In this document: piece by piece, positions 40,043-53,377 of the stretch
Layout of the letters: each line of letters opens with the position of its first letter
Numbering within the stretch: position 1 is the first letter of the stretch
IMG/VR virus record: IMGVR_UViG_3300050120_000152
Location: 1 to 64,000 of that record
Length of the DNA: 64,000 nt
Direction: 5' to 3' (one strand)
Program-made: the position numbers and the translations under genes
The notes under the pieces: generated by a model
Seen by the model: the letters and a program-made list of their open reading frames with translations, nothing else
The model's database searches: none
What the model was told of the DNA's origin: nothing

Positions 40043-40438
40043 ATGATAACTAAAACAAAAAAGAATAGTACCAAAAATGTCACACCTATGAGTGTGCAAG
40101 AATTTAAAATGTGGATTAAAGGATTATCAGATTTCCAAGATGATAGCTGGTCACCTAACAAACCTCAATGGGAACATATAAGATTATTAATTGACAGTCT
40201 TAGTGATACTGTAGTAGTGACAAATAGGCCGCAGTCCCAGCAACCTATTAGACAACCTGTAGCACCCATGGGGGAGACTGCTGTGTTAGCTGACAATTTA
40301 AGTCAGCCTATGACACAACCAGTCCAACAGCGATTTCTCGGAGGGCAATCCGATAAATCAAAATCCACCGGAGAGCATGACGAATTCGGCCACCCAGTCC
40401 TCAAATCAGCCTACAATACAGGATCAGATTTCGCTTAA
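40043..40438 (+). CDS. Hypothetical protein
   Basis: Start inferred at MITKTKK. Confidence 0.6.
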   Translation: MITKTKKNSTKNVTPMSVQEFKMWIKGLSDFQDDSWSPNKPQWEHIRLLIDSLSDTVVVTNRPQSQQPIRQPVAPMGETAVLADNLSQPMTQPVQQRFLGGQSDKSKSTGEHDEFGHPVLKSAYNTGSDFA

Positions 40439-40445
40439 TAAAATT

Positions 40446-41000
40446 ATGAAAAGCATCTTAAAAGATAGAGTATTATGGTATGATGGTGAAATTACCTTCA
40501 CCAGCGATCAATTATTAGATTTTATTGTTGGTGGTGGAGTTATAGAAGATAAAATTCATATAGCCGCATTAGATGAAGAAGTAATTAAATTTAAAAAATT
40601 ACACCCTTCAGTAAAATTGAATGTTAAGCGTGAGTTAGATCATGTAGACCAGACATGGAATATTCCCGATTCATATAAAGACATAAATATCAATAAGTAT
40701 GTACAAGCTAGATTCGTAGATTTGATCAATAAGAGAGAAGAAACGGGTAAAGATTTTTCTGAAAATGAGGTAATGGAACGCCTTAATCGTATAGAAACTG
40801 AATTAGAACTTTATAAAGAATATGATATGGATATTATCATAAAAGCAATAATATATATTATTGATGTATTTAAAAATAATGGGGTAGTTTGGGGTACGGG
40901 TCGAGGTAGTTCATGTAGTTCTTACATATTGTACTTAATAGGATTACATAGTGTTGACAGCGTAAAATATGAATTAGATTTAAACGAATTTTTTAAATAG
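40446..41000 (+). CDS. DNA polymerase III alpha-like fragment A (GRGS motif)
   Basis: RIETEL..Y...GVVWGTGRGSSCSSYILYLIGLHSVDSVKY.L..EF aligns with DnaE 'GPGRGSGAGSLVAY..IT..DP..LLFERF'. Confidence 0.8.
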   Translation: MKSILKDRVLWYDGEITFTSDQLLDFIVGGGVIEDKIHIAALDEEVIKFKKLHPSVKLNVKRELDHVDQTWNIPDSYKDININKYVQARFVDLINKREETGKDFSENEVMERLNRIETELELYKEYDMDIIIKAIIYIIDVFKNNGVVWGTGRGSSCSSYILYLIGLHSVDSVKYELDLNEFFK

Positions 41001-41008
41001 GTAAAAAT

Positions 41009-41359
41009 ATGACAAAACGTAAAAGTATGCGCGGCAAAGATGTTGACGTTGGATTGATTCGCATGAAACAACAGTTAATGGATGGTAAGAAAACAGAGCC
41101 AAACATTAAACGGGAGGATTATGTGAGTGATCGTAGACGTAGATCATCATCTAAGAGAATTGATGAAATGTTTGCCAATGAACAAATCGTAAGACAAAAA
41201 TTAGTTGATCAAAAAAAGGTTGAAGGTCAGTCGCATGAAATTGTTACTGAAGTTATTGGTGTAACCGAAGCCGCTATTCTCGCAGAAATGGTTCCTGACG
41301 AAACATCTGAAAATGCTGCCAGCCCCAAAGGGCGTACCATCCATAAAAAACAGGGATAA
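41009..41359 (+). CDS. Hypothetical basic protein
   Basis: Coupled ORF. Confidence 0.65.
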   Translation: MTKRKSMRGKDVDVGLIRMKQQLMDGKKTEPNIKREDYVSDRRRRSSSKRIDEMFANEQIVRQKLVDQKKVEGQSHEIVTEVIGVTEAAILAEMVPDETSENAASPKGRTIHKKQG

Positions 41360-41361
41360 TT

Positions 41362-41697
41362 ATGATTGAAGTTTTTGACGAAATAACGAACTACAAGCCA
41401 TTACGTAAAGGTATAATTTTTCATTTCTTACAAGACGTAGAAAGTGGTACATTTAGTAATAAGACTGAATGGAATTTTCAAGTAAGAAACCGTAATGAAG
41501 ATATAAAAACACCACGTTGGGCTATTGTTGAACGTGTAGGTTCGGATGTACCGGCTCATGTCACAGAAGGTTCTTTTATTCTTATAGAGCAATTGATGTG
41601 GACAGAGGCATTCAAAGTTAATGAAGTGAAAAAGTGGTCAACCAATTTTGATAAGGTGTTGGCTACATCCACCTTGGAACCGACAGGATTATTTTAA
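41362..41697 (+). CDS. groES: Co-chaperonin GroES-like
   Basis: KPLRKGII...PRWAIVERVGSDV..V.EG..IL. Confidence 0.6.
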   Translation: MIEVFDEITNYKPLRKGIIFHFLQDVESGTFSNKTEWNFQVRNRNEDIKTPRWAIVERVGSDVPAHVTEGSFILIEQLMWTEAFKVNEVKKWSTNFDKVLATSTLEPTGLF

Positions 41698-41700
41698 TAA

Positions 41701-41731
41701 AATGATGCACATAATGTGCATCATTTATTTT
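41701..41731 (+). terminator. Hairpin/terminator
   Basis: AATGATGCAC-ATAAT-GTGCATCATT followed by T-rich tail. Confidence 0.65.
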
Positions 41732-41815
41732 TGCTAATTCAAATAATACACAAAATATATTGACCAAGCTGCCTTTTAATGCCATAATAGACTATCTAAG
41801 ATAGGATAGTTATAC

Positions 41816-42748
41816 ATGGCAAAGCAACCTTGGGATATGAAATATTTACCATCTACCGTTGATGAGTATATTTTTCAAAATGCAGCACAGAAAGAAACAA
41901 TTATTAAAATTTTAGAAGATAAGACATTCCAGCCTCTTATCCTTTCTGGTCATCGTGGTACCGGAAAAACTAGTTTAGCATACTTAATAAAAAGTGAATA
42001 TGGCATTGAAGACAGTGATTGGTTAAAAATCAATGGTGCTGATGAAAATGATATTGGAACCGTTCGTGTAAAGGTTAAAAGTTTCGTTAGCTCTATGGCA
42101 ATGTCATTTGATTTTAAAATAGTATTCATAGATGAAGCAGACCGCCTATCAGCCAGTGCACAAGATGCTCTTAAAGGTATCATGGAAGAATATAAAGAAA
42201 ATGCTCGCTTTATCTTTACCACCAATAAGCCTCATAAGATCATCCCAGAATTAAAATCACGGTGCTTTGAAATTGAATTTCCCAGTTTGGATCGTGAGGA
42301 AATGACTTTTAAATTTGCTACTATACTACAAAAAGAGAAAATCAACGTAACCGATTTAGAAATTTTAGATGAATATGTTAATAATTGTTATCCTGATTTT
42401 AGAAAATTATTAATTACAGCAGAACAATCTGTGCGTAAAGGCACATTACCACCAATGTCAAATGTTGTATCAGATACAACAGAATTCATGGTTACTGCTA
42501 TCGAATTCATTGAAAGTGATAATTGGGAAGCTGCTAGAACGTATTTGGCTGCTAATGTGCCAGATGATCGTTGGGATGAATGCTATAGATTTTTATATGA
42601 TTACTTACATGAACTCGGTAAATTTAAAGATACCAAGAAATGGAAATCCGGTATTGTTATTATTGCCGATCATTTATATCGTCATGGATTCGTTGCCGAT
42701 GCCGAAATGAATTTTGCAGCTTGTTTAATTAGATTATCAGAAGTTTAA
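41816..42748 (+). CDS. gp44: Sliding-clamp loader AAA+ subunit (T4 gp44/RFC-like)
   Basis: W..KY.P, GHRGTGKT, IDEAD, FIFTTN, SRC, YPDFRK. Confidence 0.92.
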   Translation: MAKQPWDMKYLPSTVDEYIFQNAAQKETIIKILEDKTFQPLILSGHRGTGKTSLAYLIKSEYGIEDSDWLKINGADENDIGTVRVKVKSFVSSMAMSFDFKIVFIDEADRLSASAQDALKGIMEEYKENARFIFTTNKPHKIIPELKSRCFEIEFPSLDREEMTFKFATILQKEKINVTDLEILDEYVNNCYPDFRKLLITAEQSVRKGTLPPMSNVVSDTTEFMVTAIEFIESDNWEAARTYLAANVPDDRWDECYRFLYDYLHELGKFKDTKKWKSGIVIIADHLYRHGFVADAEMNFAACLIRLSEV

Positions 42749-42757
42749 GGAATAGAT

Positions 42758-43075
42758 ATGCATTTTACCGAAGAAAAAATTGCCAGCGATATTCATAAAA
42801 TATCAACTAACCGCGATAAAAATGAACGATTATCATGGAAAAGAAAAAAAGATAAAATAGAAACTCTGGTGAAAGAGTTAGAACCTATTGAAGATGAAAT
42901 ATTAAAACTTATTGAAGATAAAAAAGCTCCGATTCTTAATCAAATTATTGCATTACGTGGTGAAATGATTAAAGAATGTGTACATCCCAAAGATATGTTA
43001 GTGCATTATGGTAATTACGTAATGTGTAAATTTTGCGAAGCTAAACTTACCGTATCGAGTAATAGAACGCTATGA
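42758..43075 (+). CDS. Hypothetical protein with CxH..CxxC
   Basis: AGGA RBS; coiled coil plus Zn-binding motif. Confidence 0.65.
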   Translation: MHFTEEKIASDIHKISTNRDKNERLSWKRKKDKIETLVKELEPIEDEILKLIEDKKAPILNQIIALRGEMIKECVHPKDMLVHYGNYVMCKFCEAKLTVSSNRTL

Positions 43076-43527
43076 CTGAGAGAAAATTTGATATATTTGA
43101 ACTTATAGATAAAATTGGTAAGGCTGATATTAAGTATTTTGATAATTTACAAGATCACGAAATTAAACAAATATATCCATTAGTTCTTATGAAATGGTTG
43201 GGTGGTACGAAAAATGCTACTCAATTGAAATTGATTAATGAAATTGCCAATAGTACCGTATTTCCATTATATAAGCATCCAAAGTTAATGTATAAAATAC
43301 TCATGGCAACTACGGTATCCAAAGGTAGAGTATCATGGATAAAGAAAAAATCTAAAGAAAAAGATACTGAAATATTAAAAATAATAAAAGAATATTATGA
43401 ATGCTCTACCGAACGTGCAGTATCTTATTTGAAATTATTGTCTAATGAAGATATCATTGACTGTGCTGAATTGTTAGGTACTGAAAAAGAAACAATGACT
43501 AAATTGAAGAAAGAACTTAATGGATAA
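43072..43527 (+). CDS. gp62: Clamp loader small subunit (T4 gp62-like)
   Basis: 'FDIFELID..YFD..YPLVLMKWL..WIKK..IIKEYYECS.E.A..YL.LL'; position after gp44. Confidence 0.7.
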   Translation: MTERKFDIFELIDKIGKADIKYFDNLQDHEIKQIYPLVLMKWLGGTKNATQLKLINEIANSTVFPLYKHPKLMYKILMATTVSKGRVSWIKKKSKEKDTEILKIIKEYYECSTERAVSYLKLLSNEDIIDCAELLGTEKETMTKLKKELNG

Positions 43528-44197
43528 AAAATTAACATGTGATTTTTGTGACAAGCAATTTGTCAGAGAAGTTAATTTTCTCAAACATAAGTGTGAGAAA
43601 ATGAAACGATATGAATTGTTCAAAAAGCCAATAGGCCATTTGGCATATCTTACATTTAATCAATGGCGAAAAATTTGTGGATATCCATCAGTAACGGTTG
43701 ATACATTTACATCATCGAAATATTTTAATTCATTTGTAAAGTTTGCCGAATTCTCACACACGATGGCTATTCCAGATAAAATAGGTTATATCGAATTAAT
43801 GGTAAAAAAGACATTAATGCCATTTGATTGGTGTGATAATGATGTTTATGATTATTACATTACTAATTTTGATAAAGAATACAGCATTGATGAAAAAGTT
43901 GATTTATCCATAGAAACGATTGTAGATATTTCCGAGAAACAAGGTTGTGAGGTTTCCGAAGTATTCAAGCATGTTACTCCCATACAAGTTATAAAATACA
44001 TTACATCTCGAAAATTATCTCCATGGTTGTTATTACCGAGCAAAAAATTTATGGATTTTATGACATTTGATACAACACCCGAAGAACGTTTGTTATTTGG
44101 GTCATTTATTAATGTTGCAGAATGGAAAAAGTATTTTATAGCTAATCCAGACAAAGTTACAGAAATAAAAAATATCAATCGACAATTAGGAATCTGA
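43520..44197 (+). CDS. Zinc-finger (CxxC..HxC) hypothetical protein
   Basis: CDFCDKQF.RE..FLKHKC. Confidence 0.7.
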   Translation: MDKKLTCDFCDKQFVREVNFLKHKCEKMKRYELFKKPIGHLAYLTFNQWRKICGYPSVTVDTFTSSKYFNSFVKFAEFSHTMAIPDKIGYIELMVKKTLMPFDWCDNDVYDYYITNFDKEYSIDEKVDLSIETIVDISEKQGCEVSEVFKHVTPIQVIKYITSRKLSPWLLLPSKKFMDFMTFDTTPEERLLFGSFINVAEWKKYFIANPDKVTEIKNINRQLGI

Positions 44198-44235: not shown

Positions 44236-46077
44236 ATGGCAAACAATTGTGCAGATGGCGTATATAATATTGATTATACGGACAACACTCTAAATCCTAT
44301 TGTAGTGAATAAACAAACATTGATTCAAAATGTGTTGGATATTACATTATTGGGTCAAGGCAGAAAAGAATATGGTGAAATATTTGATGAAAATATTTTA
44401 CATTTATTAGAAAATTTTTCATGTCCTGAAGACCCTATAAATCTCGGAAACCCCAATCTCACAAAAACTACATCTAATCTATTAGAGCATCCCACTAAAG
44501 GGCAGCTTTGGTATAACTCTACCACACTTAGATTATATGTATATAACGGTAGCAGCTGGTTTGCATTATCTACTTCCTCGGATATTGGAGGTAACAGCGG
44601 AATTATTGCTGACGGAATGCAATTACCTCGGCCAATATCACCAATAACTGGATATGAATTTCAATATTCTGAATGTAGTTGGATCGTTAGCCCATTCAAC
44701 TTTCCATCAGAAGTTGATTACATGGTATGTTATTCTGATACAACCTCATTAACTACATCACAATATCGATTATCATCATCTTCTAGTATAATCAGTGGAT
44801 ATGCATTTTATCAGATTATAGGTATAAAATATAATAATAATACTGGGAGTGATGTGCCTATTGTGCCACCACTGCCATCATCTACACCAAGAATGTCTTC
44901 TACACCAGCACCATCAGTATCACCTACCCCAACACCGATTGTTGGATCATCGGTAACGCCTACACCATCAATAACACCATCGTCTACTGTACCAGTTACA
45001 CCCACGACAACACCTACACCTACACTTAGCCCTACATCCACTCCAGCACCTTCTGCAACGCCTGCAACAAGCGTCCCTATCCTAAGAGGCACCCTATTCA
45101 TATCTCCTTCATTAGGATATCCGCAAGGCACTAATACAGCATTACCGTCCCCATGTTCAACGAACGCTACTACAGATGTTAATTGTCAATATACCATGTC
45201 TTTAATTGTTCAAGGATTATCAGGTGGAAGTCCTCCCTATTCAGTTGATTATTCGCATGTTAATTTCTCAGCATCTATTATCAATACATCAACATCAACA
45301 ACTGTACCATTCGCTTATTATTATGCTTATACAGGGGCATCTGGCGTAACTACATCGCCATTGAGAACAGGCGTAACATCAGCTAGTACATTGACAATGT
45401 CTGCACAATTTAATGAAGTCGGTGCACAAAATCAGGTTGGATGCGGTAATGGTAGCTGGTCGCAAGGAATAGTTGGTGGTAGTTATGTAACGATAACAGA
45501 TTCGGTTGGAAGAACTTTAAATTTGTACACTCCATCAGGTCTGAACGGTAACGTTTACGGAACATCTTATACTACACCACAATCAGCCTATATTGATAAT
45601 TATTTATCGGCCCCAGCATGTGGCGGTGGTGGCGGTGGTGGTGGCGGCTGCGTATCTATTAATTCGGTATTTCCTAACGGAAATATAGCAGAAACTGTAG
45701 AGTTAGATCATATGTTGGCTACATGCGATCCATATGATTTCTTTAATTGTGGCGATAACGCGGTCACATATGCCGCAACTAGATTACAACCTTGCGTGAG
45801 ACTTGTAACAGAATCTGGCGCATCATTAATATGCTCTACAACTGCTCCTATTCCAACATTAGAAAATGGATATATGTTAGCACCTACTTTGGCTAATCAA
45901 AGTGTTCCGGTAATGCGTACAAATATAACCAAGTGGGAAAATGTTGTATCCATTGAAGATGTTGGCGAATGTTTAGTGCGTCATATTACGGTAGGCGATA
46001 GATGCTTTTGGGCTGGTGAGACAACTGATGCCTTTATATTACATCATAACTTAAAAAAACCACCAAGCGACTTATAA
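44236..46077 (+). CDS. Virion (baseplate/fibre-type) protein: shared N-domain + Pro/Thr linker + beta domain + Gly9 + C-terminal Hint domain (45649-46050)
   Basis: YG....EN.LH.LENF..P..GQLWYN N-domain; GGG|CVSINS...FILHHN|LKKPPSDL. Confidence 0.8.
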   Translation: MANNCADGVYNIDYTDNTLNPIVVNKQTLIQNVLDITLLGQGRKEYGEIFDENILHLLENFSCPEDPINLGNPNLTKTTSNLLEHPTKGQLWYNSTTLRLYVYNGSSWFALSTSSDIGGNSGIIADGMQLPRPISPITGYEFQYSECSWIVSPFNFPSEVDYMVCYSDTTSLTTSQYRLSSSSSIISGYAFYQIIGIKYNNNTGSDVPIVPPLPSSTPRMSSTPAPSVSPTPTPIVGSSVTPTPSITPSSTVPVTPTTTPTPTLSPTSTPAPSATPATSVPILRGTLFISPSLGYPQGTNTALPSPCSTNATTDVNCQYTMSLIVQGLSGGSPPYSVDYSHVNFSASIINTSTSTTVPFAYYYAYTGASGVTTSPLRTGVTSASTLTMSAQFNEVGAQNQVGCGNGSWSQGIVGGSYVTITDSVGRTLNLYTPSGLNGNVYGTSYTTPQSAYIDNYLSAPACGGGGGGGGGCVSINSVFPNGNIAETVELDHMLATCDPYDFFNCGDNAVTYAATRLQPCVRLVTESGASLICSTTAPIPTLENGYMLAPTLANQSVPVMRTNITKWENVVSIEDVGECLVRHITVGDRCFWAGETTDAFILHHNLKKPPSDL

Positions 46078-46112
46078 TATTATAACTAATCCAAACTGGA
46101 ATCGAATACAAA

Positions 46113-47474
46113 ATGACTGACTATAGTGTAAAATATACTGACAAAACAAAACCGCCAATAACTATTCCAGAAGGAGTAGTTGATTCTTCATTGGATATCG
46201 TATTGTTTGGTAGAGTAGATTTGGAATACGGCCAACAATTAAACCAAGATATGCTTAATATTTTGGAACGATTTGCCTGCCCTCAAAATGCAGCATCTAC
46301 ACTAAGCAACACCTATCCAGACTATACCATTAATGGGAATGCTTTAACCCAGCCTACTCAAGGTCAATTATGGTTCAATTCTACCACACAAAAGTTGTTT
46401 GTATGGAATGGCACAAAATGGGAAACCATCAGAAACAAAGGAGATGTGGCGGGCAATTGGGGGCAATTATTAGATGGCAGTCAAATTCCCAGACCCGTAA
46501 ATCCTGTCAATGGATATGTTTATCCTTATAGCCAATGTATTTGGGCGGTTTCCCCAGCAGCATTACCCCAAGCGTTTACTTACATGGAATGCACTACTGA
46601 TACAAATGCAGTGGTAAGTATGAAATATAGAGCTTATGGCGATAGTGTACTTTCTTCAGGTATTGCAAACTATTTGATTATTGCTATTGCTGGCAATATT
46701 AATATGGGAACGATTTCAGTAACACCAGAAATACCATCAGTTTCAGGTACACCAACCCCAACCCCACCAACCTCTGTAACGCCATTAGTATCAATAACTC
46801 CTTCCCCTACACCAACCAGCACACCGGGAACATCTGCAGTACCATCACCAACCCCAGCAGCTTCTACGAGTAGTACCCCAGCAGCATCATTAACTGCTAC
46901 CCCAACCCCAACACTTACCCCAGCATCAACATTAACTCCAACTCCATCACCATTCGTGGATGCCTGTTCAAGATGTATCGCTGATGGGTTCCATTGTTGC
47001 GTTGCTGTAAACTCATTTTTGCCAGACGGAAGCATTGCTGGACATGTTCAAGTGGGAACTTCAATGTCTCTTGCTGACCCGGTGACCTTAGAACCATCTA
47101 CTGGAATAGTATCATATTCTGAACCAAGTTTACAAGAAAGTGTTAGGGTAGTTACCCAATCGGGAGCATCACTAAATTGTTCACTTACAGCACCATTACC
47201 GACTACAGAAGGATTATTATTAGCTCCTGATGTATTAGGTAAATTTGTAGCTATTATGATGAACGATATTGCATCTTGGGATGAAGTAATTTCAGTAGAA
47301 CCTATAGGCAAGATATGGGTACAACATATAACAGTTGGTGACAATTGTTTTTGGGCTGGCGACAGCTCTAATGCATTTATATTACATCATAATATCAAAT
47401 GCTGCTATTGCGATGGTCAAACTGACTGTTCTTGGGTTCCACCTAACTGTTGTGATGGAACGGATTGCTCGTAA
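46113..47474 (+). CDS. Paralogous virion protein with Hint domain (46998-47393) and Cys-rich 26-aa tail
   Basis: Same N-domain and PT linker; FHC|CVAVNS...FILHHN|IKCCYC...CCDGTDCS. Confidence 0.8.
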   Translation: MTDYSVKYTDKTKPPITIPEGVVDSSLDIVLFGRVDLEYGQQLNQDMLNILERFACPQNAASTLSNTYPDYTINGNALTQPTQGQLWFNSTTQKLFVWNGTKWETIRNKGDVAGNWGQLLDGSQIPRPVNPVNGYVYPYSQCIWAVSPAALPQAFTYMECTTDTNAVVSMKYRAYGDSVLSSGIANYLIIAIAGNINMGTISVTPEIPSVSGTPTPTPPTSVTPLVSITPSPTPTSTPGTSAVPSPTPAASTSSTPAASLTATPTPTLTPASTLTPTPSPFVDACSRCIADGFHCCVAVNSFLPDGSIAGHVQVGTSMSLADPVTLEPSTGIVSYSEPSLQESVRVVTQSGASLNCSLTAPLPTTEGLLLAPDVLGKFVAIMMNDIASWDEVISVEPIGKIWVQHITVGDNCFWAGDSSNAFILHHNIKCCYCDGQTDCSWVPPNCCDGTDCS

Positions 47475-47479
47475 TAATT

Positions 47480-47671
47480 ATGAAATCTATAAATAAAAAA
47501 AATCCCAAACCTAAAAAGCTTACTTCATTGAATAAGCCAATTCAACGTAAAATACGTGATGTTATATTATGTGAAAGTTGTGAAATACAATGCGCTGGTC
47601 ATGGCGGCGGTACATATACCTATGATGGTAGATGTTTATGTAATGATGGTAGTTTATTGGAATGTATATGA
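47480..47671 (+). CDS. Small basic Cys-rich protein
   Basis: MKSINKK...CESCEIQC...CLC...ECI. Confidence 0.5.
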   Translation: MKSINKKNPKPKKLTSLNKPIQRKIRDVILCESCEIQCAGHGGGTYTYDGRCLCNDGSLLECI

Positions 47672-47686
47672 TATCGGAGAATAGTT

Positions 47687-47860
47687 ATGTTTCTTATTGT
47701 AAAACAAGATGATAGTGTAATCATAGGAAGTGCCATAAAACCTATAAATATTGGTGAGGCATCCAAAAATGGATACATCATCTGTGAAATACCTGATAAA
47801 GAATTTGACCCTAAAATGATAGGATCAAAAATAGAAGATTTTGACTACTGGAATGATTAA
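47687..47860 (+). CDS. 57-aa protein MFLIVKQDDS...DFDYWND (absent from the ORF track)
   Basis: GGAG RBS; TAATG coupling to gene 47860. Confidence 0.7.
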   Translation: MFLIVKQDDSVIIGSAIKPINIGEASKNGYIICEIPDKEFDPKMIGSKIEDFDYWND

Positions 47861-49146
47861 TGTCATATACAATAAATTTTACTGATAAACGTAAAACGCC
47901 AATCATTATTGATGATACGGATATTGACACATCTACTGATATTGCATTATTCGGTAGAAACCGCTTGACTTATGGCGAACAATTACAAGAAAATTTATTA
48001 CATATCTTAGAAAATTTTTCATGTCCAGAAGACCCTCTTTTTCCGGGTAATCCAGATTTATCCAAAGCATCGAATAATGCATTTCAACATATAACTATAG
48101 GGCAAGGTTGGTATAATTCGACCAATTCAACATTATATTATTATGATGGCACATACTGGATGCCATTAGCTGCTGAACAAAGTATCGCAGCAAATTGGGG
48201 AATCATTGCTGATGGACAGTATTTACCGAATCCAGTAAGTGCGATTACCGGACAAATATTTTCTTATGTTCATTGCGTTTATATTGTAAGCCCTCAAACA
48301 TTTCCACAAACTATTGATTATATGATATGTAAAGCAGATGCCAATGGTTTAGTTACTATGAAATATAGAATATCTGGTACTGATAGTATAATTGGTGGAG
48401 TAGCAAATTATTTGATTGTAGGTATTGCTGGCAATATTAATCAACCTGCTCCTACTGTTGCAGTAACACTTACTCCTACCCCTACACCTACGTCATCGTC
48501 GGGAACATCACATACACCAACACCAACTATTACCCCATCTACCACGCCAGTATCAACAACAACCCCAACACCAACACCAACAACATCAGTCGGTACATCG
48601 ATTACTCCTGTACCATCGGTAACACCAACACGTATTCCAATATCATCGGTAACGCCAACACCAACAACATCAGCAGCACCATTATCGCCATTAGCATTCC
48701 AAGGTCAATCTATTCATGCATTTACCGATGTACCGCCAAGATGTCCCGGTGTGGCAGGGGCGGCAACTATCCAATGTATATTCAATGCAGATGGAACATA
48801 TTCTATAAACACAACTTCCAATCAATTTGGACAAGACAGAACACCAAATCAATCTGGTATATGGTTACCTGCTGGATGGTCATCATCGGATACATCAATA
48901 AAATTTACCGATGTAGTTAATTTTATATCGGAAGCTAACCCAGCGTCAGTAACTAATTCTGCACCAGCATATCAACCATTAGCCGCAACACAATTATATA
49001 CATTATCTACTTCCGGTGGTTGTACCGCAGGTACAGGTATGGGATCAAATATTACACTGACAATTTCGCTTAAACGGATATCTACTGGCGTATTTTTTAA
49101 TACTACATGTACCTTAGATTGTGAATCATCTGATGCAGGTTTGTAA
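47860..49146 (+). CDS. Third paralogous virion protein (same N-domain + PT linker, different non-Hint C-domain)
   Basis: YTINFTD..LFGRNR..YGE.L.ENLLH.LENF; TPTP tract. Confidence 0.8.
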   Translation: MSYTINFTDKRKTPIIIDDTDIDTSTDIALFGRNRLTYGEQLQENLLHILENFSCPEDPLFPGNPDLSKASNNAFQHITIGQGWYNSTNSTLYYYDGTYWMPLAAEQSIAANWGIIADGQYLPNPVSAITGQIFSYVHCVYIVSPQTFPQTIDYMICKADANGLVTMKYRISGTDSIIGGVANYLIVGIAGNINQPAPTVAVTLTPTPTPTSSSGTSHTPTPTITPSTTPVSTTTPTPTPTTSVGTSITPVPSVTPTRIPISSVTPTPTTSAAPLSPLAFQGQSIHAFTDVPPRCPGVAGAATIQCIFNADGTYSINTTSNQFGQDRTPNQSGIWLPAGWSSSDTSIKFTDVVNFISEANPASVTNSAPAYQPLAATQLYTLSTSGGCTAGTGMGSNITLTISLKRISTGVFFNTTCTLDCESSDAGL

Positions 49147-49154
49147 TTTTATCT

Positions 49155-49808
49155 ATGATCAAAAAGATCAAAAATTTAAAATTATCTATCACTCCTGAAC
49201 AAGTAAAAAACGAATGGAATGAGGTAAAATCGGTACGAAACCGTTTATTACAAAATAGTGATTGGATATTTACCCCTGATAATAATTTAGAAGAATCTAT
49301 TGTATTGTTGTGGACGGCTTGGCGAAAAAATATTAGACGCGTTGATGAATTTACTGAAATTGATAAAGCATTACAGTTTTTACAAGATTTGCAGGATAAT
49401 TCGCCGCCGATAAAATATAAAAATAATAATTATCATTCATTAGAATCTTATAAACAAGGATTAGTAAAATTGGTTAGCAGTATTATGAAAGATACTCTTG
49501 ATTCTATCCACGTATCCATAGATTGTCGAGAAATAGTAATGGAGAAATTTGAAGAAGCTGAAAAATTTCTCGCTGGTAATATAGAAAATACCATGTTGAT
49601 AGACCTTGAGGCCGCACATTTAAGCAAATCACAACTTGAGGTTGCAGAACAATTTATTAAAGAACGGCACAATTATTTTCTAAAAATAGTAACGATTGAA
49701 ACAGTTAAAAACAAATTTTTAACTCGTATAGAAAATGTTGAAACTATTCAGCAATGTGATACTATACGCGACGACTTACAAGTTTTAGGAACCAAAATAT
49801 GGATATAG
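49155..49808 (+). CDS. Tail fibre assembly chaperone-like protein
   Basis: W..V...RN.LL..SDW....D......W..WR..IR motif; follows the fibre-like genes. Confidence 0.65.
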   Translation: MIKKIKNLKLSITPEQVKNEWNEVKSVRNRLLQNSDWIFTPDNNLEESIVLLWTAWRKNIRRVDEFTEIDKALQFLQDLQDNSPPIKYKNNNYHSLESYKQGLVKLVSSIMKDTLDSIHVSIDCREIVMEKFEEAEKFLAGNIENTMLIDLEAAHLSKSQLEVAEQFIKERHNYFLKIVTIETVKNKFLTRIENVETIQQCDTIRDDLQVLGTKIWI

Positions 49809-50371
49809 ATATTGATGTACCTTCAAAATTCGATGCAATGAAAACCTTTACGGGAAAAGTGGTGCGTGCATCTCGTATAGAAAATGAGACAATACTTAAG
49901 CATAATGTAGGTGTATATTTTCAAAATATACCCACTGATCTAATAACAGGATTAGCTGCTATACCTTATGACAAATCCGAAGAATATGGATATTTCAAGA
50001 TGGATATCATTGCCAATTCAGCAATAGATGATTTTGAATCGAAAGCATGGATGGATGAATATATTGAAATAGAACCTAATTGGAACCTATTGCTTGAACG
50101 TGAGAATGTGGAAAAATTGTTTCACCTATCCAAACAATTTGACGTTGTATATGCGGTAAAACCCAAATCTATATTAGAAATTGCAGACATTCTAGCTCTG
50201 ATTCGTAAAAATAAAATAAAACTATTAGATAAATATTTACAGAATAAAAAAGCTATCCGCAAGGAACTTTATACTCATCGTGAAGGTGCTGATATGAGAA
50301 AACCGCATGCATTAGCATATGCTCTTATTATTGTGCTACAACTACATTTAATAGAAATGGGAAAATTATAA
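49799..50371 (+). CDS. DNA polymerase III alpha-like fragment B (catalytic palm)
   Basis: MDIDID (DnaE PDxDxD), KHNVGVYF (HAAGVVI), YGYFKMDII (GLVKFDFL). Confidence 0.8.
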   Translation: MDIDIDVPSKFDAMKTFTGKVVRASRIENETILKHNVGVYFQNIPTDLITGLAAIPYDKSEEYGYFKMDIIANSAIDDFESKAWMDEYIEIEPNWNLLLERENVEKLFHLSKQFDVVYAVKPKSILEIADILALIRKNKIKLLDKYLQNKKAIRKELYTHREGADMRKPHALAYALIIVLQLHLIEMGKL

Positions 50372-51207: not shown

Positions 51208-52521
51208 TCATGCCGGACAGGTTCCCCATACAGGCCGCGATAATACCCACGATGTTGCAGATAAATCAAAGTTACTGGGCACTGACGGGATCAATGTGAC
51301 GCACCAATGAGATAAATCTTGATTAAATGCATAAGCACTATAAAACATATAAGACATATCTGTTACCTTACTAGTATTCCATGAACCAATATCTTGATTA
51401 AATGCCGAAGCACTTTGAAACATTTGACTCATAGCTGTTACATTACTAGTATTCCATGATCCAATATTGCCATTAAAAGAAGAAGCATTAACAAACATAG
51501 CAGACATATCAGTTACATTACTGGTATCCCATGAACCAATATTGCCATTAAATGCTGTAGCATTATTAAACATACTACTCATAGTAGTTACATGACTGGT
51601 ATTCCATGATGATAAATCTTGGTTGAATACTAGAGTATTCTGGAACATAAAACTCATATCAGTTACATTACTGGTATTCCATGAGGATATGTCTCGATTA
51701 AACAATAATGTGCCACCTAACATTATACTCATATTAGTTACATTACTGGTATCCCATGAGGATATATCTTGATTGAATGTTTTAGCATCAGCAAACATAA
51801 AACTCAAATTAGTTAATGTTGTTGGGATAAAATTGGGCACAAAAGTAATATCTTGTGGAAGATTTATATTTGTTATGTTATAAGTCCCCCATGTTGTAAC
51901 AACCGTTGATGATCCACCCAGATCACCAACGGCTAAATAAAAAAATACTCCTGCAGTAATAGTGCCATTATTAATATAATCACCATAAACCTTAATAGTA
52001 TAATCACCAACGGTATCATATTGATGTGTTATTCCATTAACACAAGCATCATCACTTCCATCTGATGCACCATTTGGGATTGGAGTGATAGTTCCGTCAC
52101 CCCAATCAATAGAAGCATTATTGGATGCTCCACATGCATAGAATTCATAACCAAAAGCATTAGTTACATTCAGGGTGAATGGAGTTAGTCCACCTATTGA
52201 TGGTGTTGGAGTTGGCGTAGGAGGAATTGCTCCAACATCAAACAACATCAAAAATACTTCTCCCATTGTAGGATTAGTAAAAGTTATTGTTATTGTATTA
52301 ATATCATTGACCACAATAGAGGCTGGATATATTTTCTGACCGTCAGACACAACTGTTATTACAAATTTGTTAGTGTTTTGTCCATGATTAAGTACCCACA
52401 CATATGACGGAGTTGATTGCACGCAATGAAATTGAGCCATACCATCTTGAATAACTCTATCAGTATAAAATTCCTGACCAGTGACTAGATCAATATAAAT
52501 GGCATTGTAAGATTGTGACAT
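51208..52521 (-). CDS. Virion adhesin-like protein: N-domain + PT linker + PKD-like + DUF285/BspA repeats
   Basis: Start MSQSYN 24 nt after minus-strand TATAAATA (52545-52552); FN.[DN]I.SW[DN]TS.VT.MS.MF repeats; C-terminus WCVT..P..F...W...PVWGTCP shared with 22722. Confidence 0.8.
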   Translation of the reverse strand: MSQSYNAIYIDLVTGQEFYTDRVIQDGMAQFHCVQSTPSYVWVLNHGQNTNKFVITVVSDGQKIYPASIVVNDINTITITFTNPTMGEVFLMLFDVGAIPPTPTPTPSIGGLTPFTLNVTNAFGYEFYACGASNNASIDWGDGTITPIPNGASDGSDDACVNGITHQYDTVGDYTIKVYGDYINNGTITAGVFFYLAVGDLGGSSTVVTTWGTYNITNINLPQDITFVPNFIPTTLTNLSFMFADAKTFNQDISSWDTSNVTNMSIMLGGTLLFNRDISSWNTSNVTDMSFMFQNTLVFNQDLSSWNTSHVTTMSSMFNNATAFNGNIGSWDTSNVTDMSAMFVNASSFNGNIGSWNTSNVTAMSQMFQSASAFNQDIGSWNTSKVTDMSYMFYSAYAFNQDLSHWCVTLIPSVPSNFDLSATSWVLSRPVWGTCPA

Positions 52522-52603
52522 TAGGCAAATCCGATATTCCCTATTATTTATAGTCAGTGATCCAAGGAAGATAAATACAATAAAGTTAACGAGTTTACTA
52601 AGC

Positions 52604-53377
52604 ATGTCTATCAGAATTGTCAATAAGACTAATGGCCGTACCATTATTATCAAGAATCAAAATGATATGAATCATTTAGATTCATCTGTGTCATCCATTG
52701 ATGACGATGATAATGCATTCAGATTGATGCCAAGAAATACTGACACTGACGATGCAGACAAGAATGATCCCTATTCCGAACCATCTTCATACCATACAAT
52801 GGGTCAATCGACCGATCTTATTAATAATATGCGTTACAAGAAAAGTGGGTTTTCAAACGCTATGTTTGATGTTAACTCCTTTGATGATGATAAATCCAAG
52901 CATTATATTAAGACTACTGAATATCCCTTGGCTGATGAGATAAAAAGTTGGTTCAATCCAATGACTGTTGATGCGCCTATCACTCGATTAAAGACTACTG
53001 ACATTCCAGATGATCAAATATCAGATACCCAACAAACTTCAGATTTATTCGGACAGAGTGATGGAGATGATAATAATGAATTATCAGATGATACTAAACA
53101 ATCTGACACAGAGAATACCGATTTTCAAGGATTGATTCGTACCATTCGTGGTGCATGTTTAGTTTTCAAACGTAAATCACAAAATGGTACTTTTGATGAA
53201 TTATGGATTTATAATGTTGGTGATAATCTAAAGCAAGAAACCATTGTCAGAAAAGCTATCTTAGCAGGTACTGATATTGATCCCAACACACAAATGTCAG
53301 ATGATGGTACACAGAAAGCAAAAACTCACACTATTGGAAATATACAATTCTTAAATATTTCTGGCCTTGTTCAATAA
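52604..53377 (+). CDS. Acidic hypothetical protein (probably late/virion)
   Basis: 257-aa ORF; GATAAATA upstream. Confidence 0.65.
   Translation: MSIRIVNKTNGRTIIIKNQNDMNHLDSSVSSIDDDDNAFRLMPRNTDTDDADKNDPYSEPSSYHTMGQSTDLINNMRYKKSGFSNAMFDVNSFDDDKSKHYIKTTEYPLADEIKSWFNPMTVDAPITRLKTTDIPDDQISDTQQTSDLFGQSDGDDNNELSDDTKQSDTENTDFQGLIRTIRGACLVFKRKSQNGTFDELWIYNVGDNLKQETIVRKAILAGTDIDPNTQMSDDGTQKAKTHTIGNIQFLNISGLVQ

What the first reader, a model, noticed from the sequence alone, without database searches (positions are those of the whole stretch)
44236..47474. Two paralogous virion proteins end in non-canonical Hint (intein/hedgehog-like) domains
Seen: after a shared N-domain and Pro/Thr stalk, both carry ~133-aa domains starting with Cys (Gly9|CVSINS at 45649; FHC|CVAVNS at 46998) and ending in HHN. 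The +1 residue is Leu or Ile, not C/S/T. The block-B TxxH His is replaced (CSTTAPI / CSLTAPL) and block F reads V.HITV instead of VYDxxV. A third paralog (47860) has a different tip and no Hint. Known: Hint domains without a +1 nucleophile (BIL/hedgehog type) usually cleave or ligate rather than splice. Inference: a self-processing system for virion appendages, e.g. a cleavable folding chaperone, triggered shedding, or thioester-mediated covalent attachment to a small molecule or host surface.
Basis: partly seen in the sequence, partly recalled or inferred. Interest (0 to 1): 0.75.

Follow-up and report, generated by a model that had tools for sequence, protein, structure and literature searches.

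The report
Self-cleaving Hint caps on phage fibres
Two fibre-like proteins of a 340-kb jumbo phage end in a previously unmodelled, intein-related (Hint) domain that most likely cuts itself off the fibre tip, a known kind of chemistry in an unusual place and with an unusual active site.

Summary
ORFs 44236-46077 (613 aa) and 46113-47474 (453 aa) share an N-domain and a Pro/Thr stalk. Each ends in a 134- or 132-aa domain that runs from Cys to His-His-Asn.

The Hint reading is supported. AlphaFold2 gives pLDDT 92.9, and all top 50 Foldseek PDB hits are inteins, BIL or Hedgehog domains (TM 0.7-0.77). No Pfam or NCBIfam model detects the domain, including 0 of 107 relatives.

The domain defines a large family: 683 cluster representatives, from jumbo phages and from Burkholderiales and Xanthomonadales bacteria. 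Its signature:
- Cys1 is invariant, after a Gly-rich linker.
- Block B reads S-x-T-A, with Ala in place of the catalytic His.
- His replaces the block-F Asp.
- The end is HHN. The +1 residue is hydrophobic and is Cys/Ser/Thr in only 6 of 151.
- Lys sits at +2 in 75%.

Hint-less homologues of the first protein's tip end exactly where the linker and Hint begin. The N-domain is predicted to form a trimer, and its nearest structural neighbours are phage tail-fibre and tailspike proteins.

Best reading: a bacterial-intein-like, single-turnover module that removes itself from the distal end of a trimeric phage fibre. The chemistry and the presence in virions are inferred, not shown. This is a new variant of a known kind.

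The parts
44236..46077 (+). p1: 613-aa fibre-like protein (N-domain, P/T stalk, beta-rich tip, Gly9 linker, Hint, 8-aa tail)
   Evidence: ORF. It matches phrog_15511 at 5.7e-96. Orthologues are P0003 and P0170-P0174.
44236..44850 (+). p1 N-terminal anchor domain (about aa 1-205), shared by the three paralogs
   Evidence: Alignment A4 holds 82 sequences. The p2 N-domain, first row of A4, was modelled by AF2 at pLDDT 86.8. The trimer model scores 0.86 against a best control of 0.00. The nearest Atlas folds are phage fibre and spike proteins.
44851..45105 (+). p1 Pro/Thr/Ser-rich stalk (approximate limits)
   Evidence: Read directly from the translation.
45106..45621 (+). p1 distal beta-rich tip domain (approximate start); it ends ...YLSAPAC
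   Evidence: The alignment with the Hint-less homologues P0221 and P0230 shows that they terminate 2-7 aa after this domain. There is no Pfam hit.
45622..45648 (+). Gly9 linker, which is the N-extein end (-9..-1)
   Evidence: Across the family, positions -5..-1 are each about 50-60% Gly.
45649..46050 (+). p1 Hint domain, Cys472 to Asn605 (134 aa)
   Evidence: AF2 gives pLDDT 92.9 and pTM 0.88. All top 50 Foldseek PDB hits are inteins, BIL or Hedgehog domains.
46051..46077 (+). p1 C-extein LKKPPSDL plus the stop codon; Lys at +2
   Evidence: Lys at +2 in 113 of 151 relatives.
46113..47474 (+). p2: 453-aa fibre-like protein (N-domain, P/T stalk, Cys-rich N-flank, Hint, Cys-rich tail)
   Evidence: ORF. 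It matches phrog_15511 at 2.1e-102. Orthologues P0154-P0165 are 53-65% identical.
46953..46997 (+). p2 N-flank FVDACSRCIADGFHC (C-x2-C-x6-C, with Cys at -1)
   Evidence: The pattern is conserved in the p2 orthologues (12 of the 13 sequences, window included, as parsed; P0155 was mis-parsed). It is also present on a different 1152-aa protein in L019.
46998..47393 (+). p2 Hint domain, Cys296 to Asn427 (132 aa)
   Evidence: It is 47% identical to the p1 Hint. The genome profile hit scores 1.6e-59.
47394..47474 (+). p2 C-extein IKCCYCDGQTDCSWVPPNCCDGTDCS (26 aa, 8 Cys) plus the stop codon
   Evidence: The pattern [IL]KCCYC...C.W..PNCC.C is conserved among the orthologues.
47480..47671 (+). 63-aa ORF: a Lys-rich N-terminus followed by a Cys module (C-x2-C-x3-C..HGG..C-x-C-x-DG-x4-C); possibly an associated tip or adaptor protein
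   Evidence: The module is fused to the p2-type C-extein in P0162 (52% identity over 33 aa, E 6e-9). It also ends the Hint-less paralog P0234 (E 1e-5).
47860..49146 (+). p3: third paralog, with the same N-domain and stalk, a different tip (phrog_11610) and no Hint
49155..49808 (+). 217-aa protein resembling a tail-fibre assembly chaperone
   Evidence: It matches phrog_4912 (tail fiber assembly) at 1.8e-7 and phrog_4697 (tail assembly chaperone) at 2.4e-7.

Best explanation
p1 and p2 are trimeric, fibre-like appendage proteins of a 340-kb jumbo phage that shares this N-domain family with XacN1-type jumbo phages. Each has a conserved N-terminal anchor domain, a Pro/Thr stalk and a variable distal tip. 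After a flexible linker, each carries a divergent Hint domain of the bacterial-intein-like (BIL) kind at the extreme C-terminus.

The domain most likely acts once, on its own chain, in three steps:
1. Cys1 attacks the preceding peptide bond (Gly|Cys in p1, Cys|Cys in p2). This N-to-S acyl shift turns the bond into a thioester.
2. No +1 Cys/Ser/Thr is present, so another nucleophile resolves the thioester. Candidates are water, or an amine such as the conserved Lys at +2 or the freed C-extein amino group.
3. The invariant His-His-Asn end permits Asn cyclisation, which cuts the C-terminal junction.

The net result is that the Hint is removed and the mature fibre ends at, or just after, its linker. 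Functionally this would be a transient C-terminal cap or maturation module. It would be analogous to, but not homologous with, the Peptidase_S74 intramolecular-chaperone domains of other tail fibres and spikes.

Shown here: the fold, the family signature, the architecture and the predicted trimeric N-domain. Inferred: all the chemistry, the timing, and the presence of these proteins in virions.
For: Fold:
- AF2 gives pLDDT 92.9.
- The top 50 Foldseek PDB hits are all inteins, BIL or Hedgehog Hint domains. Examples are DnaB inteins at TM 0.73-0.77, C. thermocellum BIL 2lwy at 0.71, Tetrahymena BIL2 at 0.72 and Hedgehog 1at0 at 0.75.
- The profile search against PDB sequences hits several inteins, best E 3e-4.
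- Language-model neighbours that carry a Pfam name are all Hint, PT-HINT or Vint.

Catalytic signature under selection:
- Cys1 is present in 107 of 107.
- HHN ends 148 of the 158 domain matches; 151 end in some His-Asn.
- The -1 residue is Gly, Ala or Ser in 91 of 107.
- The +1 residue is Cys/Ser/Thr in only 6 of 151.
- Lys sits at +2 in 113 of 151, and within +1..+6 in 135 of 151.

The module is appended and removable:
- The Hint-less homologues P0221 and P0230 end 2-7 aa after the conserved tip domain. That is exactly where a linker of variable length (about 9-50 aa) and the Hint begin in p1 and its orthologues.
- The C-extein is usually tiny: median 15 aa across the family, and 2-3 aa in most of a sister Hint subfamily.

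The theme recurs:
- Other members of the same N-domain family end in other Hint subfamilies. One has canonical CFAxGT / TTxxH / ILAHN motifs and sub-threshold PT-HINT and Hint_2 hits.

Fibre nature:
- There are weak PHROG tail-fibre matches.
- A gene resembling a tail-fibre assembly chaperone lies downstream.
- The trimer model of the N-domain scores 0.86, against a best control of 0.00. That mark was reached by 20 of 30 proteins solved as pairs of one chain and by 1 of 23 solved as single chains. The counts hold only roughly here, because I used my own alignment and three copies.
- The nearest Atlas folds are all phage proteins. They include Collar, Mtd_N, Peptidase_G2 and Peptidase_S74 proteins.
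- Hint-bearing homologues sit in baseplate or tail-fibre modules of PhiXhv-16 and RTH11.
- The RsoM2USA homologue lies beside a virion protein confirmed by mass spectrometry.

Precedents:
- A-type BILs cleave without a +1 nucleophile (PMC7765530).
- Tetrahymena BIL2 forms a Lys isopeptide bond (PMC8616854).
- Inteins that lack the block-B His work through compensating residues (PMC6333167).
Against: - No experimental evidence of cleavage exists for any member.
- The block-B His, the most conserved catalytic residue of inteins, is Ala in all 107 aligned members. It is Thr in the divergent Xanthomonas and Stenotrophomonas phage members.
- The candidate compensating residue, His112 at the block-F Asp position, is only 86% conserved. 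By my reading of the translations, it is absent in the divergent members.
- If only removal mattered, it is unclear why the C-terminal Asn machinery and the +2 Lys are so strictly kept.
- The strictly conserved Cys-rich flanks of the p2 type suggest that the two exteins work together.
- Virion localisation is indirect. The XacN1 paper saw no tail fibres, and its proteome figure could not be read.
- The gene cluster lies among replication genes, not in a structural module.
Confidence: 0.55

Rival explanations
1. Thioester warhead or ligase. The Hint is kept on the assembled fibre. The Gly-linked thioester that it generates is attacked by an amine or hydroxyl of another molecule. This fixes the fibre's distal end covalently to another virion protein, to a small molecule, or to a host-surface component. 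It would work like cholesterol transfer by Hedgehog or Lys conjugation by Tetrahymena BIL2.
For: - A flexible Gly-rich linker precedes Cys1 across the family.
- The domain sits at the distal, variable end of a fibre.
- No internal +1 nucleophile is present.
- Precedent exists for Hint-mediated transfer to a Lys (PMC8616854).
- Bacterial members occur on secreted or surface proteins: a PKD-repeat protein, a pilin-like protein, and a likely substrate of a C39-ABC/HlyD exporter.
Against: - No acceptor is identifiable.
- Hint-less homologues with the same tip exist.
- The invariant terminal Asn and the +2 Lys are not needed for transfer to an outside acceptor.
- A thioester equilibrium exposed on free virions would tend to hydrolyse.
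Confidence: 0.15
2. True extein joining without a +1 nucleophile. The Hint excises itself and ligates the N-extein to the short C-extein. The bond forms either through the freed alpha-amine (the route proposed for A-type BILs) or as an isopeptide to the conserved +2 Lys. In p2-type cassettes this would assemble a single Cys-rich knot of about 40 aa at the fibre tip.
For: - The p2 orthologues conserve Cys patterns on both sides of the Hint: C-x2-C-x6-C|C ... HHN|[IL]KCCYC...C.W..PNCC.C.
- The whole cassette, flanks included, occurs on an unrelated 1152-aa fibre-like protein in another jumbo phage.
- HHN and a Lys at +1 or +2 are conserved family-wide.
- BIL2 forms a Lys isopeptide bond.
Against: - No Hint-less protein with contiguous flanks was found among the 89 N-domain homologues inspected.
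- Most C-exteins are short and unconserved apart from x-K.
- The review says that A-type BILs cleave but cannot ligate their flanks (PMC7765530). My recollection of Dassa et al. 2004 is that some splicing was seen; I did not check this here.
Confidence: 0.15
3. Catalytically dead Hint fold, reused as a structural or receptor-binding knob that stays on the fibre tip.
For: - The block-B His is absent in every member, and the block-F Asp is replaced.
- The domain is compact, confidently folded and distal, like a knob.
Against: - Cys1, Val2 and the terminal HHN are invariant.
- The -1 residue is small in most members (Gly, Ala or Ser in 91 of 107). It is Cys in the p2 group.
- These are exactly the residues needed for junction chemistry, and they lie at the domain's ends rather than on a binding surface.
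- Surface positions vary.
- The domain occurs on unrelated proteins of phages and bacteria, and also in tandem.
Confidence: 0.1
4. Classical mobile intein, or a pretoxin-HINT that releases a C-terminal effector (for p2, the 26-aa Cys-rich peptide).
For: - The Hint fold is confirmed.
- Some family members have long C-terminal parts. One example is P0103, where the Hint lies upstream of DUF6531 and RHS repeats.
- The p2 tail is conserved.
Against: - There is no +1 nucleophile and no homing endonuclease.
- The domain is not inserted in a conserved host site, and Hint-less homologues end at the junction.
- The p1 C-extein is 8 aa, the family median is 15 aa, and no toxin domain follows.
- No PT-HINT model hit was found.
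Confidence: 0.04

Closest known systems
A-type bacterial intein-like (BIL) domains, which I recall as corresponding to Pfam PT-HINT (PF07591)
   Same: - Hint fold.
- N-terminal Cys and C-terminal His-Asn.
- No obligatory +1 Cys/Ser/Thr.
- Found in variable regions of non-conserved secreted or surface proteins.
- Expected to cleave its junctions rather than splice in the canonical way (PMC7765530).
   Different: - No match to PF07591 or to any Hint model, even at E<=10, for the window's domains or for 107 relatives.
- Block B lacks His (S-x-T-A) and block F has His in place of Asp.
- The end motif is HHN-[LIMV]-K.
- It mostly sits at the extreme C-terminus with no payload behind it.
- The hosts here are jumbo-phage fibre-like proteins.
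Tetrahymena BUBL BIL2 (PDB 6Y75 / 6TMM)
   Same: - Structural match at TM 0.70-0.72.
- BIL chemistry that transfers the N-extein C-terminus to a Lys amine (PMC8616854). This gives a precedent for a role of the conserved +2 Lys.
   Different: - BIL2 keeps the catalytic block-B His (H69), and that His is Zn-regulated.
- BIL2 is flanked by ubiquitin-like domains.
- Sequence identity is about 12%.
Hedgehog C-terminal autoprocessing (Hog/Hint) domain
   Same: - A C-terminal Hint follows a Gly|Cys junction.
- The thioester is resolved by an outside nucleophile.
- Structural match at TM 0.71-0.75 (1at0, 6tyy).
   Different: - No TxxH motif.
- No sterol-recognition region, because the tail is only 8-26 aa.
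- The HHN end is strictly conserved, and Hedgehog does not need it.
Peptidase_S74 intramolecular chaperone auto-cleaving domains of phage tail fibres and tailspikes
   Same: - Same position and probably the same logic: a C-terminal module on a trimeric fibre that removes itself.
- Atlas neighbours of the N-domain include proteins that carry Peptidase_S74.
   Different: - Unrelated fold and chemistry. By general knowledge, S74 uses a Ser-Lys dyad; here the fold is Hint with Cys and Asn.
- There is no sequence or Pfam match.
Class 1 mini-inteins (DnaB, gp41-1, DnaE)
   Same: - These are the best structural matches, at TM up to 0.77.
- Blocks A, B, F and G can be aligned.
   Different: - No +1 nucleophile and no block-B His.
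- Not inserted in a conserved protein.
- Canonical ligation is not possible.

Membership tests
HINT (Hedgehog/intein) superfamily | Horseshoe-like all-beta Hint fold | tested here: met
   AF2 gives pLDDT 92.9. All top 50 Foldseek PDB hits are Hint domains, with E down to 1e-6 and TM 0.6-0.77. BFVD hits include proteins annotated as Hint and terminase inteins.
HINT (Hedgehog/intein) superfamily | Nucleophilic Cys/Ser as first residue of the domain | tested here: met
   Cys1 is present in 107 of 107 aligned relatives and in both window copies.
HINT (Hedgehog/intein) superfamily | Autocatalytic N-S acyl shift or cleavage activity | not testable with these tools
   This needs protein expression and mass spectrometry.
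Inteins (class 1) | Cys/Ser/Thr at +1 of the C-extein | tested here: not met
   The +1 residue is Leu in p1 and Ile in p2. It is Cys/Ser/Thr in 6 of 151 relatives.
Inteins (class 1) | Block B T-x-x-H with catalytic His | tested here: not met
   The motif aligns to S63-x-T-A66. Ser is present in 107 of 107 and Ala in 107 of 107.
Inteins (class 1) | Inserted within a conserved host protein whose intein-less alleles are contiguous across the site | tested here: not met
   The Hint-less homologues P0221 and P0230 terminate at the junction. No contiguous-flank homologue was found among the 89 proteins inspected.
Inteins (class 1) | Terminal His-Asn (block G) | tested here: met
   HHN ends both window copies and 148 of 158 domain matches among the listed relatives.
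A-type BIL / PT-HINT (PF07591) | Conserved C-terminal His-Asn with no required +1 nucleophile, in variable regions of surface or secreted proteins | tested here: met
   Contexts include phage fibre tips, PKD-repeat, pilin-like and RHS proteins, and a neighbour of a C39-ABC/HlyD exporter.
A-type BIL / PT-HINT (PF07591) | Match to the family's sequence model | tested here: not met
   There is no Pfam hit at E<=10 for the two domains. None of the 107 relatives hits any Hint model at E<=1. A sister subfamily on the same N-domain does reach PT-HINT at 8e-5 and Hint_2 at 7.5e-5, below the curated cut-offs.
Hedgehog Hog domain | Hint followed by a sterol-recognition region; T-x-x-H present | tested here: not met
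   The tails are 8 and 26 aa. Block B lacks His.
Peptidase_S74 (tail-fibre intramolecular chaperone) | S74 sequence model or fold | tested here: not met
   There is no Pfam hit and the fold is Hint. The resemblance is in position and probable role only.
Phage tail-fibre-like appendage proteins | Trimeric N-terminal anchor, stalk, variable distal tip, adjacent assembly chaperone | tested here: inconclusive
   - The trimer model scores 0.86 against a best control of 0.00.
- Atlas neighbours are phage fibre and spike proteins at TM 0.43-0.50.
- The best PDB hit is the AP22 tail fibre at only E 0.022.
- PHROG tail-fibre hits are at 6.5e-5 to 4e-3.
- The chaperone-like neighbour scores about 2e-7.
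- No virion proteomics is available.

The most novel reading that the evidence does not exclude
The conserved set of features is Cys1, a Gly-rich flexible N-linker, no block-B His, HHN and an obligatory Lys at +1 or +2. It could define a new Hint reaction class that makes an amide (isopeptide) bond instead of hydrolysing. In cis, it would transfer the fibre's C-terminus to the +2 Lys ('isopeptide splicing'). In trans, it would attach the C-terminus to a Lys or other nucleophile on a virion protein or on the host surface. That would give phage fibres an ATP-independent way to attach covalently.
Probability: 0.15. Interest if true: 0.85.

Novelty: new variant of a known kind. Interest (0 to 1): 0.62.

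Why it matters
Self-cleaving C-terminal modules are known on phage fibres only as Peptidase_S74 chaperones. As far as the literature searches here went, a Hint domain in that role has not been described.

If the reading holds, it would show that phages have found a second way to build a removable fibre cap.

The family is large: 683 cluster representatives, spread over phages and Proteobacteria. It is invisible to Pfam and NCBIfam, so a model of it would annotate many 'hypothetical' fibre tips and secreted proteins.

The active site is altered family-wide: no block-B His, His at the block-F Asp position, and HHN-x-K at the end. That makes it a natural test case for how Hint domains activate the N-terminal junction. 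The domain is compact and needs no +1 nucleophile, so it could also yield new cleavage or ligation tools.

For phage biology, processing at the distal tip bears on how receptor-binding fibres mature and on how tip cassettes move between fibres.

Tried and rejected
- Pfam at E<=10 on whole proteins and on the isolated domains gave no Hint hit. Pfam on 107 relatives and NCBIfam also gave none. This is a negative for membership of the modelled families, not for the fold.
- phmmer of the single domain against PDB sequences found nothing useful. Only the profile search reached inteins.
- Megablast of the locus against phage records found no match.
- hhalign of the family (A2) against the canonical-motif sister subfamily (A3) gave probability 5%, with only block A aligned. 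The two C-terminal Hint types on this N-domain family therefore cannot be linked by sequence.
I rebuilt the alignment without them.
- In the XacN1 paper, the virion proteome is in a figure that is not held as text. ORF231-235 could not be checked. An invalid search term cost one call.
- The phiCbK and CBB papers mention Hint only for terminase inteins, which is irrelevant here. The jumbo-phage comparative paper does not mention fibre Hints.
- Foldseek of the N-domain monomer against PDB gave no significant hit (best E 0.022).
- A classical intein and a toxin-releasing PT-HINT were considered and rejected for the window's two proteins (see rivals).
- Not attempted: checking whether Cys62, His112, Cys119 and His132 cluster into a metal or redox site.

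Full report
**1. Observation**

The window holds three tandem + strand ORFs: p1 at 44236-46077 (613 aa), p2 at 46113-47474 (453 aa) and p3 at 47860-49146 (428 aa). All three match PHROG 15511, of unknown function, at E about 1e-95 to 1e-102. They also give weak partial matches to tail-fibre PHROGs.

- p1 and p2 end in domains of 134 and 132 aa. p1's begins at Cys472 (nt 45649, after nine Gly). p2's begins at Cys296 (nt 46998, after FHC). Both end in His-His-Asn.
- The +1 residues are Leu and Ile. The two domains are 47% identical (E 2e-44).
- A profile search of the whole genome finds only these two copies, so p3 lacks the domain. The genome is a 340,344-bp viral record with direct terminal repeats.

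**2. Is it a Hint domain?**

Library HMMs say nothing. Pfam gives no hit even at E<=10 on the isolated domains. None of 107 relatives hits any Hint model at E<=1. NCBIfam gives none.

Three other lines of evidence agree that it is a Hint domain.

- *Sequence profile.* phmmer against 1.84 billion cluster representatives finds 683 relatives at E<=1e-3. A profile built from them hits inteins in the PDB sequence set: PhoCDC21-1 at 3e-4, gp41-1 at 0.01, and the DnaX, NrdJ-1, KlbA and DnaB inteins more weakly.
- *Structure.* AlphaFold2 on a 107-sequence alignment gives pLDDT 92.9 and pTM 0.88. All 50 best Foldseek PDB matches are inteins, BIL domains or Hedgehog autoprocessing domains, at TM 0.6-0.77 and E down to 1e-6. 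In BFVD the best matches are uncharacterised phage proteins (TM 0.86-0.90), followed by terminase and polymerase inteins and proteins annotated as Hint.
- *Language-model neighbours.* Every neighbour that carries a Pfam name is Hint, PT-HINT or Vint.

The Hint fold is established as firmly as computation allows.

**3. Family signature**

- Cys1 and Val2 are invariant.
- Positions -5 to -1 are each 50-60% Gly, and -1 is Gly, Ala or Ser in 91 of 107.
- Block B aligns as C62-S63-x-T-A66-P67. Ser occupies the position of the intein Thr. An invariant Ala occupies the position of the catalytic His (alignments to gp41-1, DnaX and CDC21-1).
- The block-F Asp position is His112 (86%). Cys119 is 79% conserved.
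- The domain ends L-H-H-N. HHN ends 148 of the 158 domain matches, and 151 end in some His-Asn.
- The +1 residue is Leu, Ile, Met, Val, Lys or Ala. It is Cys/Ser/Thr in only 6 of 151.
Another 17 have it at +1, and 135 of 151 have a Lys within +1..+6.
- Divergent members in Xanthomonas and Stenotrophomonas phages read S-x-S-T-P in block B and [TS]HN at the end. Their Lys lies at +3 to +5.

No member seen has a block-B His. Natural inteins without that His exist and use compensating residues (PMC6333167). Its absence is therefore unusual but does not disprove activity.

**4. Where the domain sits**

It is usually at the extreme C-terminus, with a median of 15 residues after the Asn.

In p1 and its orthologues, a conserved beta-rich tip domain ends ...YTDSW.S..NC. 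It is followed by a linker of very variable length (about 9-50 aa, Gly- or Pro/Thr-rich) and then the Hint. Two homologues of the same tip that lack a Hint, P0221 and P0230, simply stop 2-7 residues after the tip domain. The Hint is thus an appended module behind a complete tip, not an insertion inside a domain.

The p2 type is different and intriguing.

- Its orthologues conserve a C-x2-C-x6-C motif immediately before Cys1.
- After the Asn they conserve an [IL]KCCYC...C.W..PNCC.C tail.
- The whole cassette, flanks included, also occurs at the end of an unrelated 1152-aa fibre-like protein in another 350-kb viral contig (L019).
- In one relative (P0162) the tail runs on into a Cys module. In the window that module is a separate 63-aa ORF at 47480-47671. 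The same module ends the Hint-less paralog P0234.

Other proteins with the same N-domain end in other Hint subfamilies. One has fully canonical CFAxGT / TTxxH / FVALDVE..DTLIV / ILAHN motifs, a C-extein of only 2-3 aa in most members, and sub-threshold PT-HINT and Hint_2 hits. C-terminal Hint modules are therefore a recurrent feature of this fibre family.

The family is not confined to phages.

- Genome contigs of Burkholderiales and Xanthomonadales carry it.
- In Albitalea terrae, an 822-aa protein ending in the domain lies directly upstream of a C39-peptidase ABC exporter and a HlyD protein.
- Other members combine the domain with PKD repeats, a pilin-type N-terminus, or downstream RHS repeats.
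- Tandem copies joined by linkers of about 5-7 aa (HHN|KKxGx|C in three of the four, SHN|AIKGPGG|C in P0005) also exist.

**5. Are these fibre proteins?** The evidence is indirect but consistent.

- A gene just downstream (49155-49808) matches the tail-fibre assembly and chaperone PHROGs at about 2e-7.
- The N-domain family occurs in about six copies each in XacN1, Xoo-sp13, CM1 and RAS14. It occurs once in RsoM2USA, next to a virion protein confirmed by mass spectrometry and near the tail sheath and baseplate genes.
- Hint-bearing homologues in PhiXhv-16 and RTH11 lie in baseplate or tail-fibre modules.
- The N-domain model (pLDDT 86.8) has no significant PDB match. The best is the AP22 tail fibre at E 0.022.
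- Its nearest ESM Atlas folds are all phage proteins, including Collar, Mtd_N, Peptidase_G2 and Peptidase_S74 proteins, at TM 0.43-0.50.
- A three-copy complex prediction scored 0.86, against a best control of 0.00. That mark was reached by 20 of 30 proteins solved as pairs of one chain and 1 of 23 solved as single chains. The counts hold only roughly here, because I used my own alignment and three copies.

No virion proteomics could be read for any member. The XacN1 authors saw no tail fibres by electron microscopy. The cluster sits between clamp-loader and DNA-polymerase genes, and the same arrangement is kept in a related contig.

**6. Mechanism**

The residues kept invariant are exactly those at the two junctions. 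They point to a single-turnover reaction: an N-S acyl shift at the (Gly/Cys)|Cys1 bond, and Asn cyclisation at HHN|x.

There is no +1 nucleophile, so canonical splicing is excluded. The thioester must be resolved by water or by an amine. Hint-less homologues end at the junction and the C-extein is mostly a few residues long. The simplest outcome is therefore self-removal of the Hint from the fibre tip. This would be a transient cap or maturation step, analogous to the Peptidase_S74 intramolecular chaperones.

I put about 0.55 on this reading. It leaves two things unexplained:
- why the Asn machinery and the +2 Lys are so strictly kept;
- why the p2 flanks are conserved on both sides.

These features keep three alternatives alive:
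- ligation of the flanks by an amine route, for which Tetrahymena BIL2 forms a Lys isopeptide bond (PMC8616854);
- thioester transfer to an external acceptor;
- less likely, a non-catalytic knob.

**7. Comparison and novelty**

The domain works most like an A-type BIL. It shares the His-Asn end, the lack of a +1 nucleophile and the location in variable surface proteins (PMC7765530). It fails the sequence-model test for PT-HINT and lacks the block-B His, so I do not file it as a member of that family. It is a new subfamily within the HINT superfamily.

Literature searches found no description of Hint domains at phage fibre C-termini. That search covers open-access text only.

Verdict: a real feature and a new variant of a known kind. 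It is of moderate to high interest, and the decisive experiments are simple.

Noticed in passing
window 47480-47671 (+): A 63-aa ORF with a Lys-rich N-terminus and a Cys module (C-x2-C-x3-C..HGG..C-x-C-x-DG-x4-C). In a related contig the same module is fused to the C-extein of the p2 orthologue (P0162). It also forms the C-terminus of Hint-less paralogs (P0234, P0232). It may be a tip or adaptor piece that works with p2.
   Followed up: partly
window 46953-46997 and 47394-47471; L019 19-3477: The Cys-rich sequences on both sides of the p2 Hint are conserved in the orthologues. They move together with the Hint as one cassette onto an unrelated 1152-aa fibre-like protein in another jumbo-phage contig.
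   Followed up: partly
window 49155-49808 (+): A 217-aa protein with matches at about 2e-7 to the tail-fibre assembly and tail assembly chaperone PHROGs. It lies directly after the three paralogs.
   Followed up: partly
window 40377-44197 and 49799-50371: The fibre-gene cluster is embedded among replication genes: DNA-polymerase pieces at 40377-41000 and 49799-50371, and clamp-loader genes at 41816-42748 and 43072-43527. The same order is kept in a related contig (L007).
   Followed up: partly
window 44811-45131 (-) and 46670-47035 (-): Long antisense ORFs rich in Gly, Val and Asp lie opposite the Pro/Thr-rich stalks. They are almost certainly composition artefacts of the repetitive ACN/CCN codons, not genes.
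   Followed up: no
proteins P0005, P0021, P0056, P0089: Some relatives carry two Hint domains in tandem, joined by a linker of only about 5-7 residues (HHN|KKxGx|C in three, SHN|AIKGPGG|C in P0005). Simple self-removal does not explain a tandem arrangement.
   Followed up: no
L014 1955-8128 (Albitalea terrae): A bacterial 822-aa protein ending in this Hint domain lies directly upstream of a C39-peptidase ABC exporter and a HlyD-family protein. This suggests that it is an exported substrate.
   Followed up: partly
L002 177-1655 (Stenotrophomonas phage DLP6, KU682439.2): An open frame of about 490-550 aa ends in a divergent copy of the domain. It is not annotated in the record, and it runs off the start of the record and across its annotated 229-bp repeat region.
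   Followed up: no
L006 1-6312 (Xanthomonas phage XacN1 ORF231-235): XacN1 has the same arrangement: a run of paralogous genes of about 430-530 aa (six N-domain matches in the record). It is followed by a 285-aa protein (ORF231) that ends GGGGGG|C...YTHN|V.
   Followed up: partly
window 51208-52653 (-): A 480-aa protein on the opposite strand with an internally repeated C-terminal unit. Several PHROGs of unknown function each match it in 2-3 stretches.
   Followed up: no
domain positions 62, 112, 119, 132 (p1 aa 533, 583, 590, 603): Cys62, His112, Cys119 and His132 are conserved in the core family. By my reading of the translations, the last three are replaced in the divergent [TS]HN members. 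They could form a metal or redox switch. I could not check their spatial proximity.
   Followed up: no
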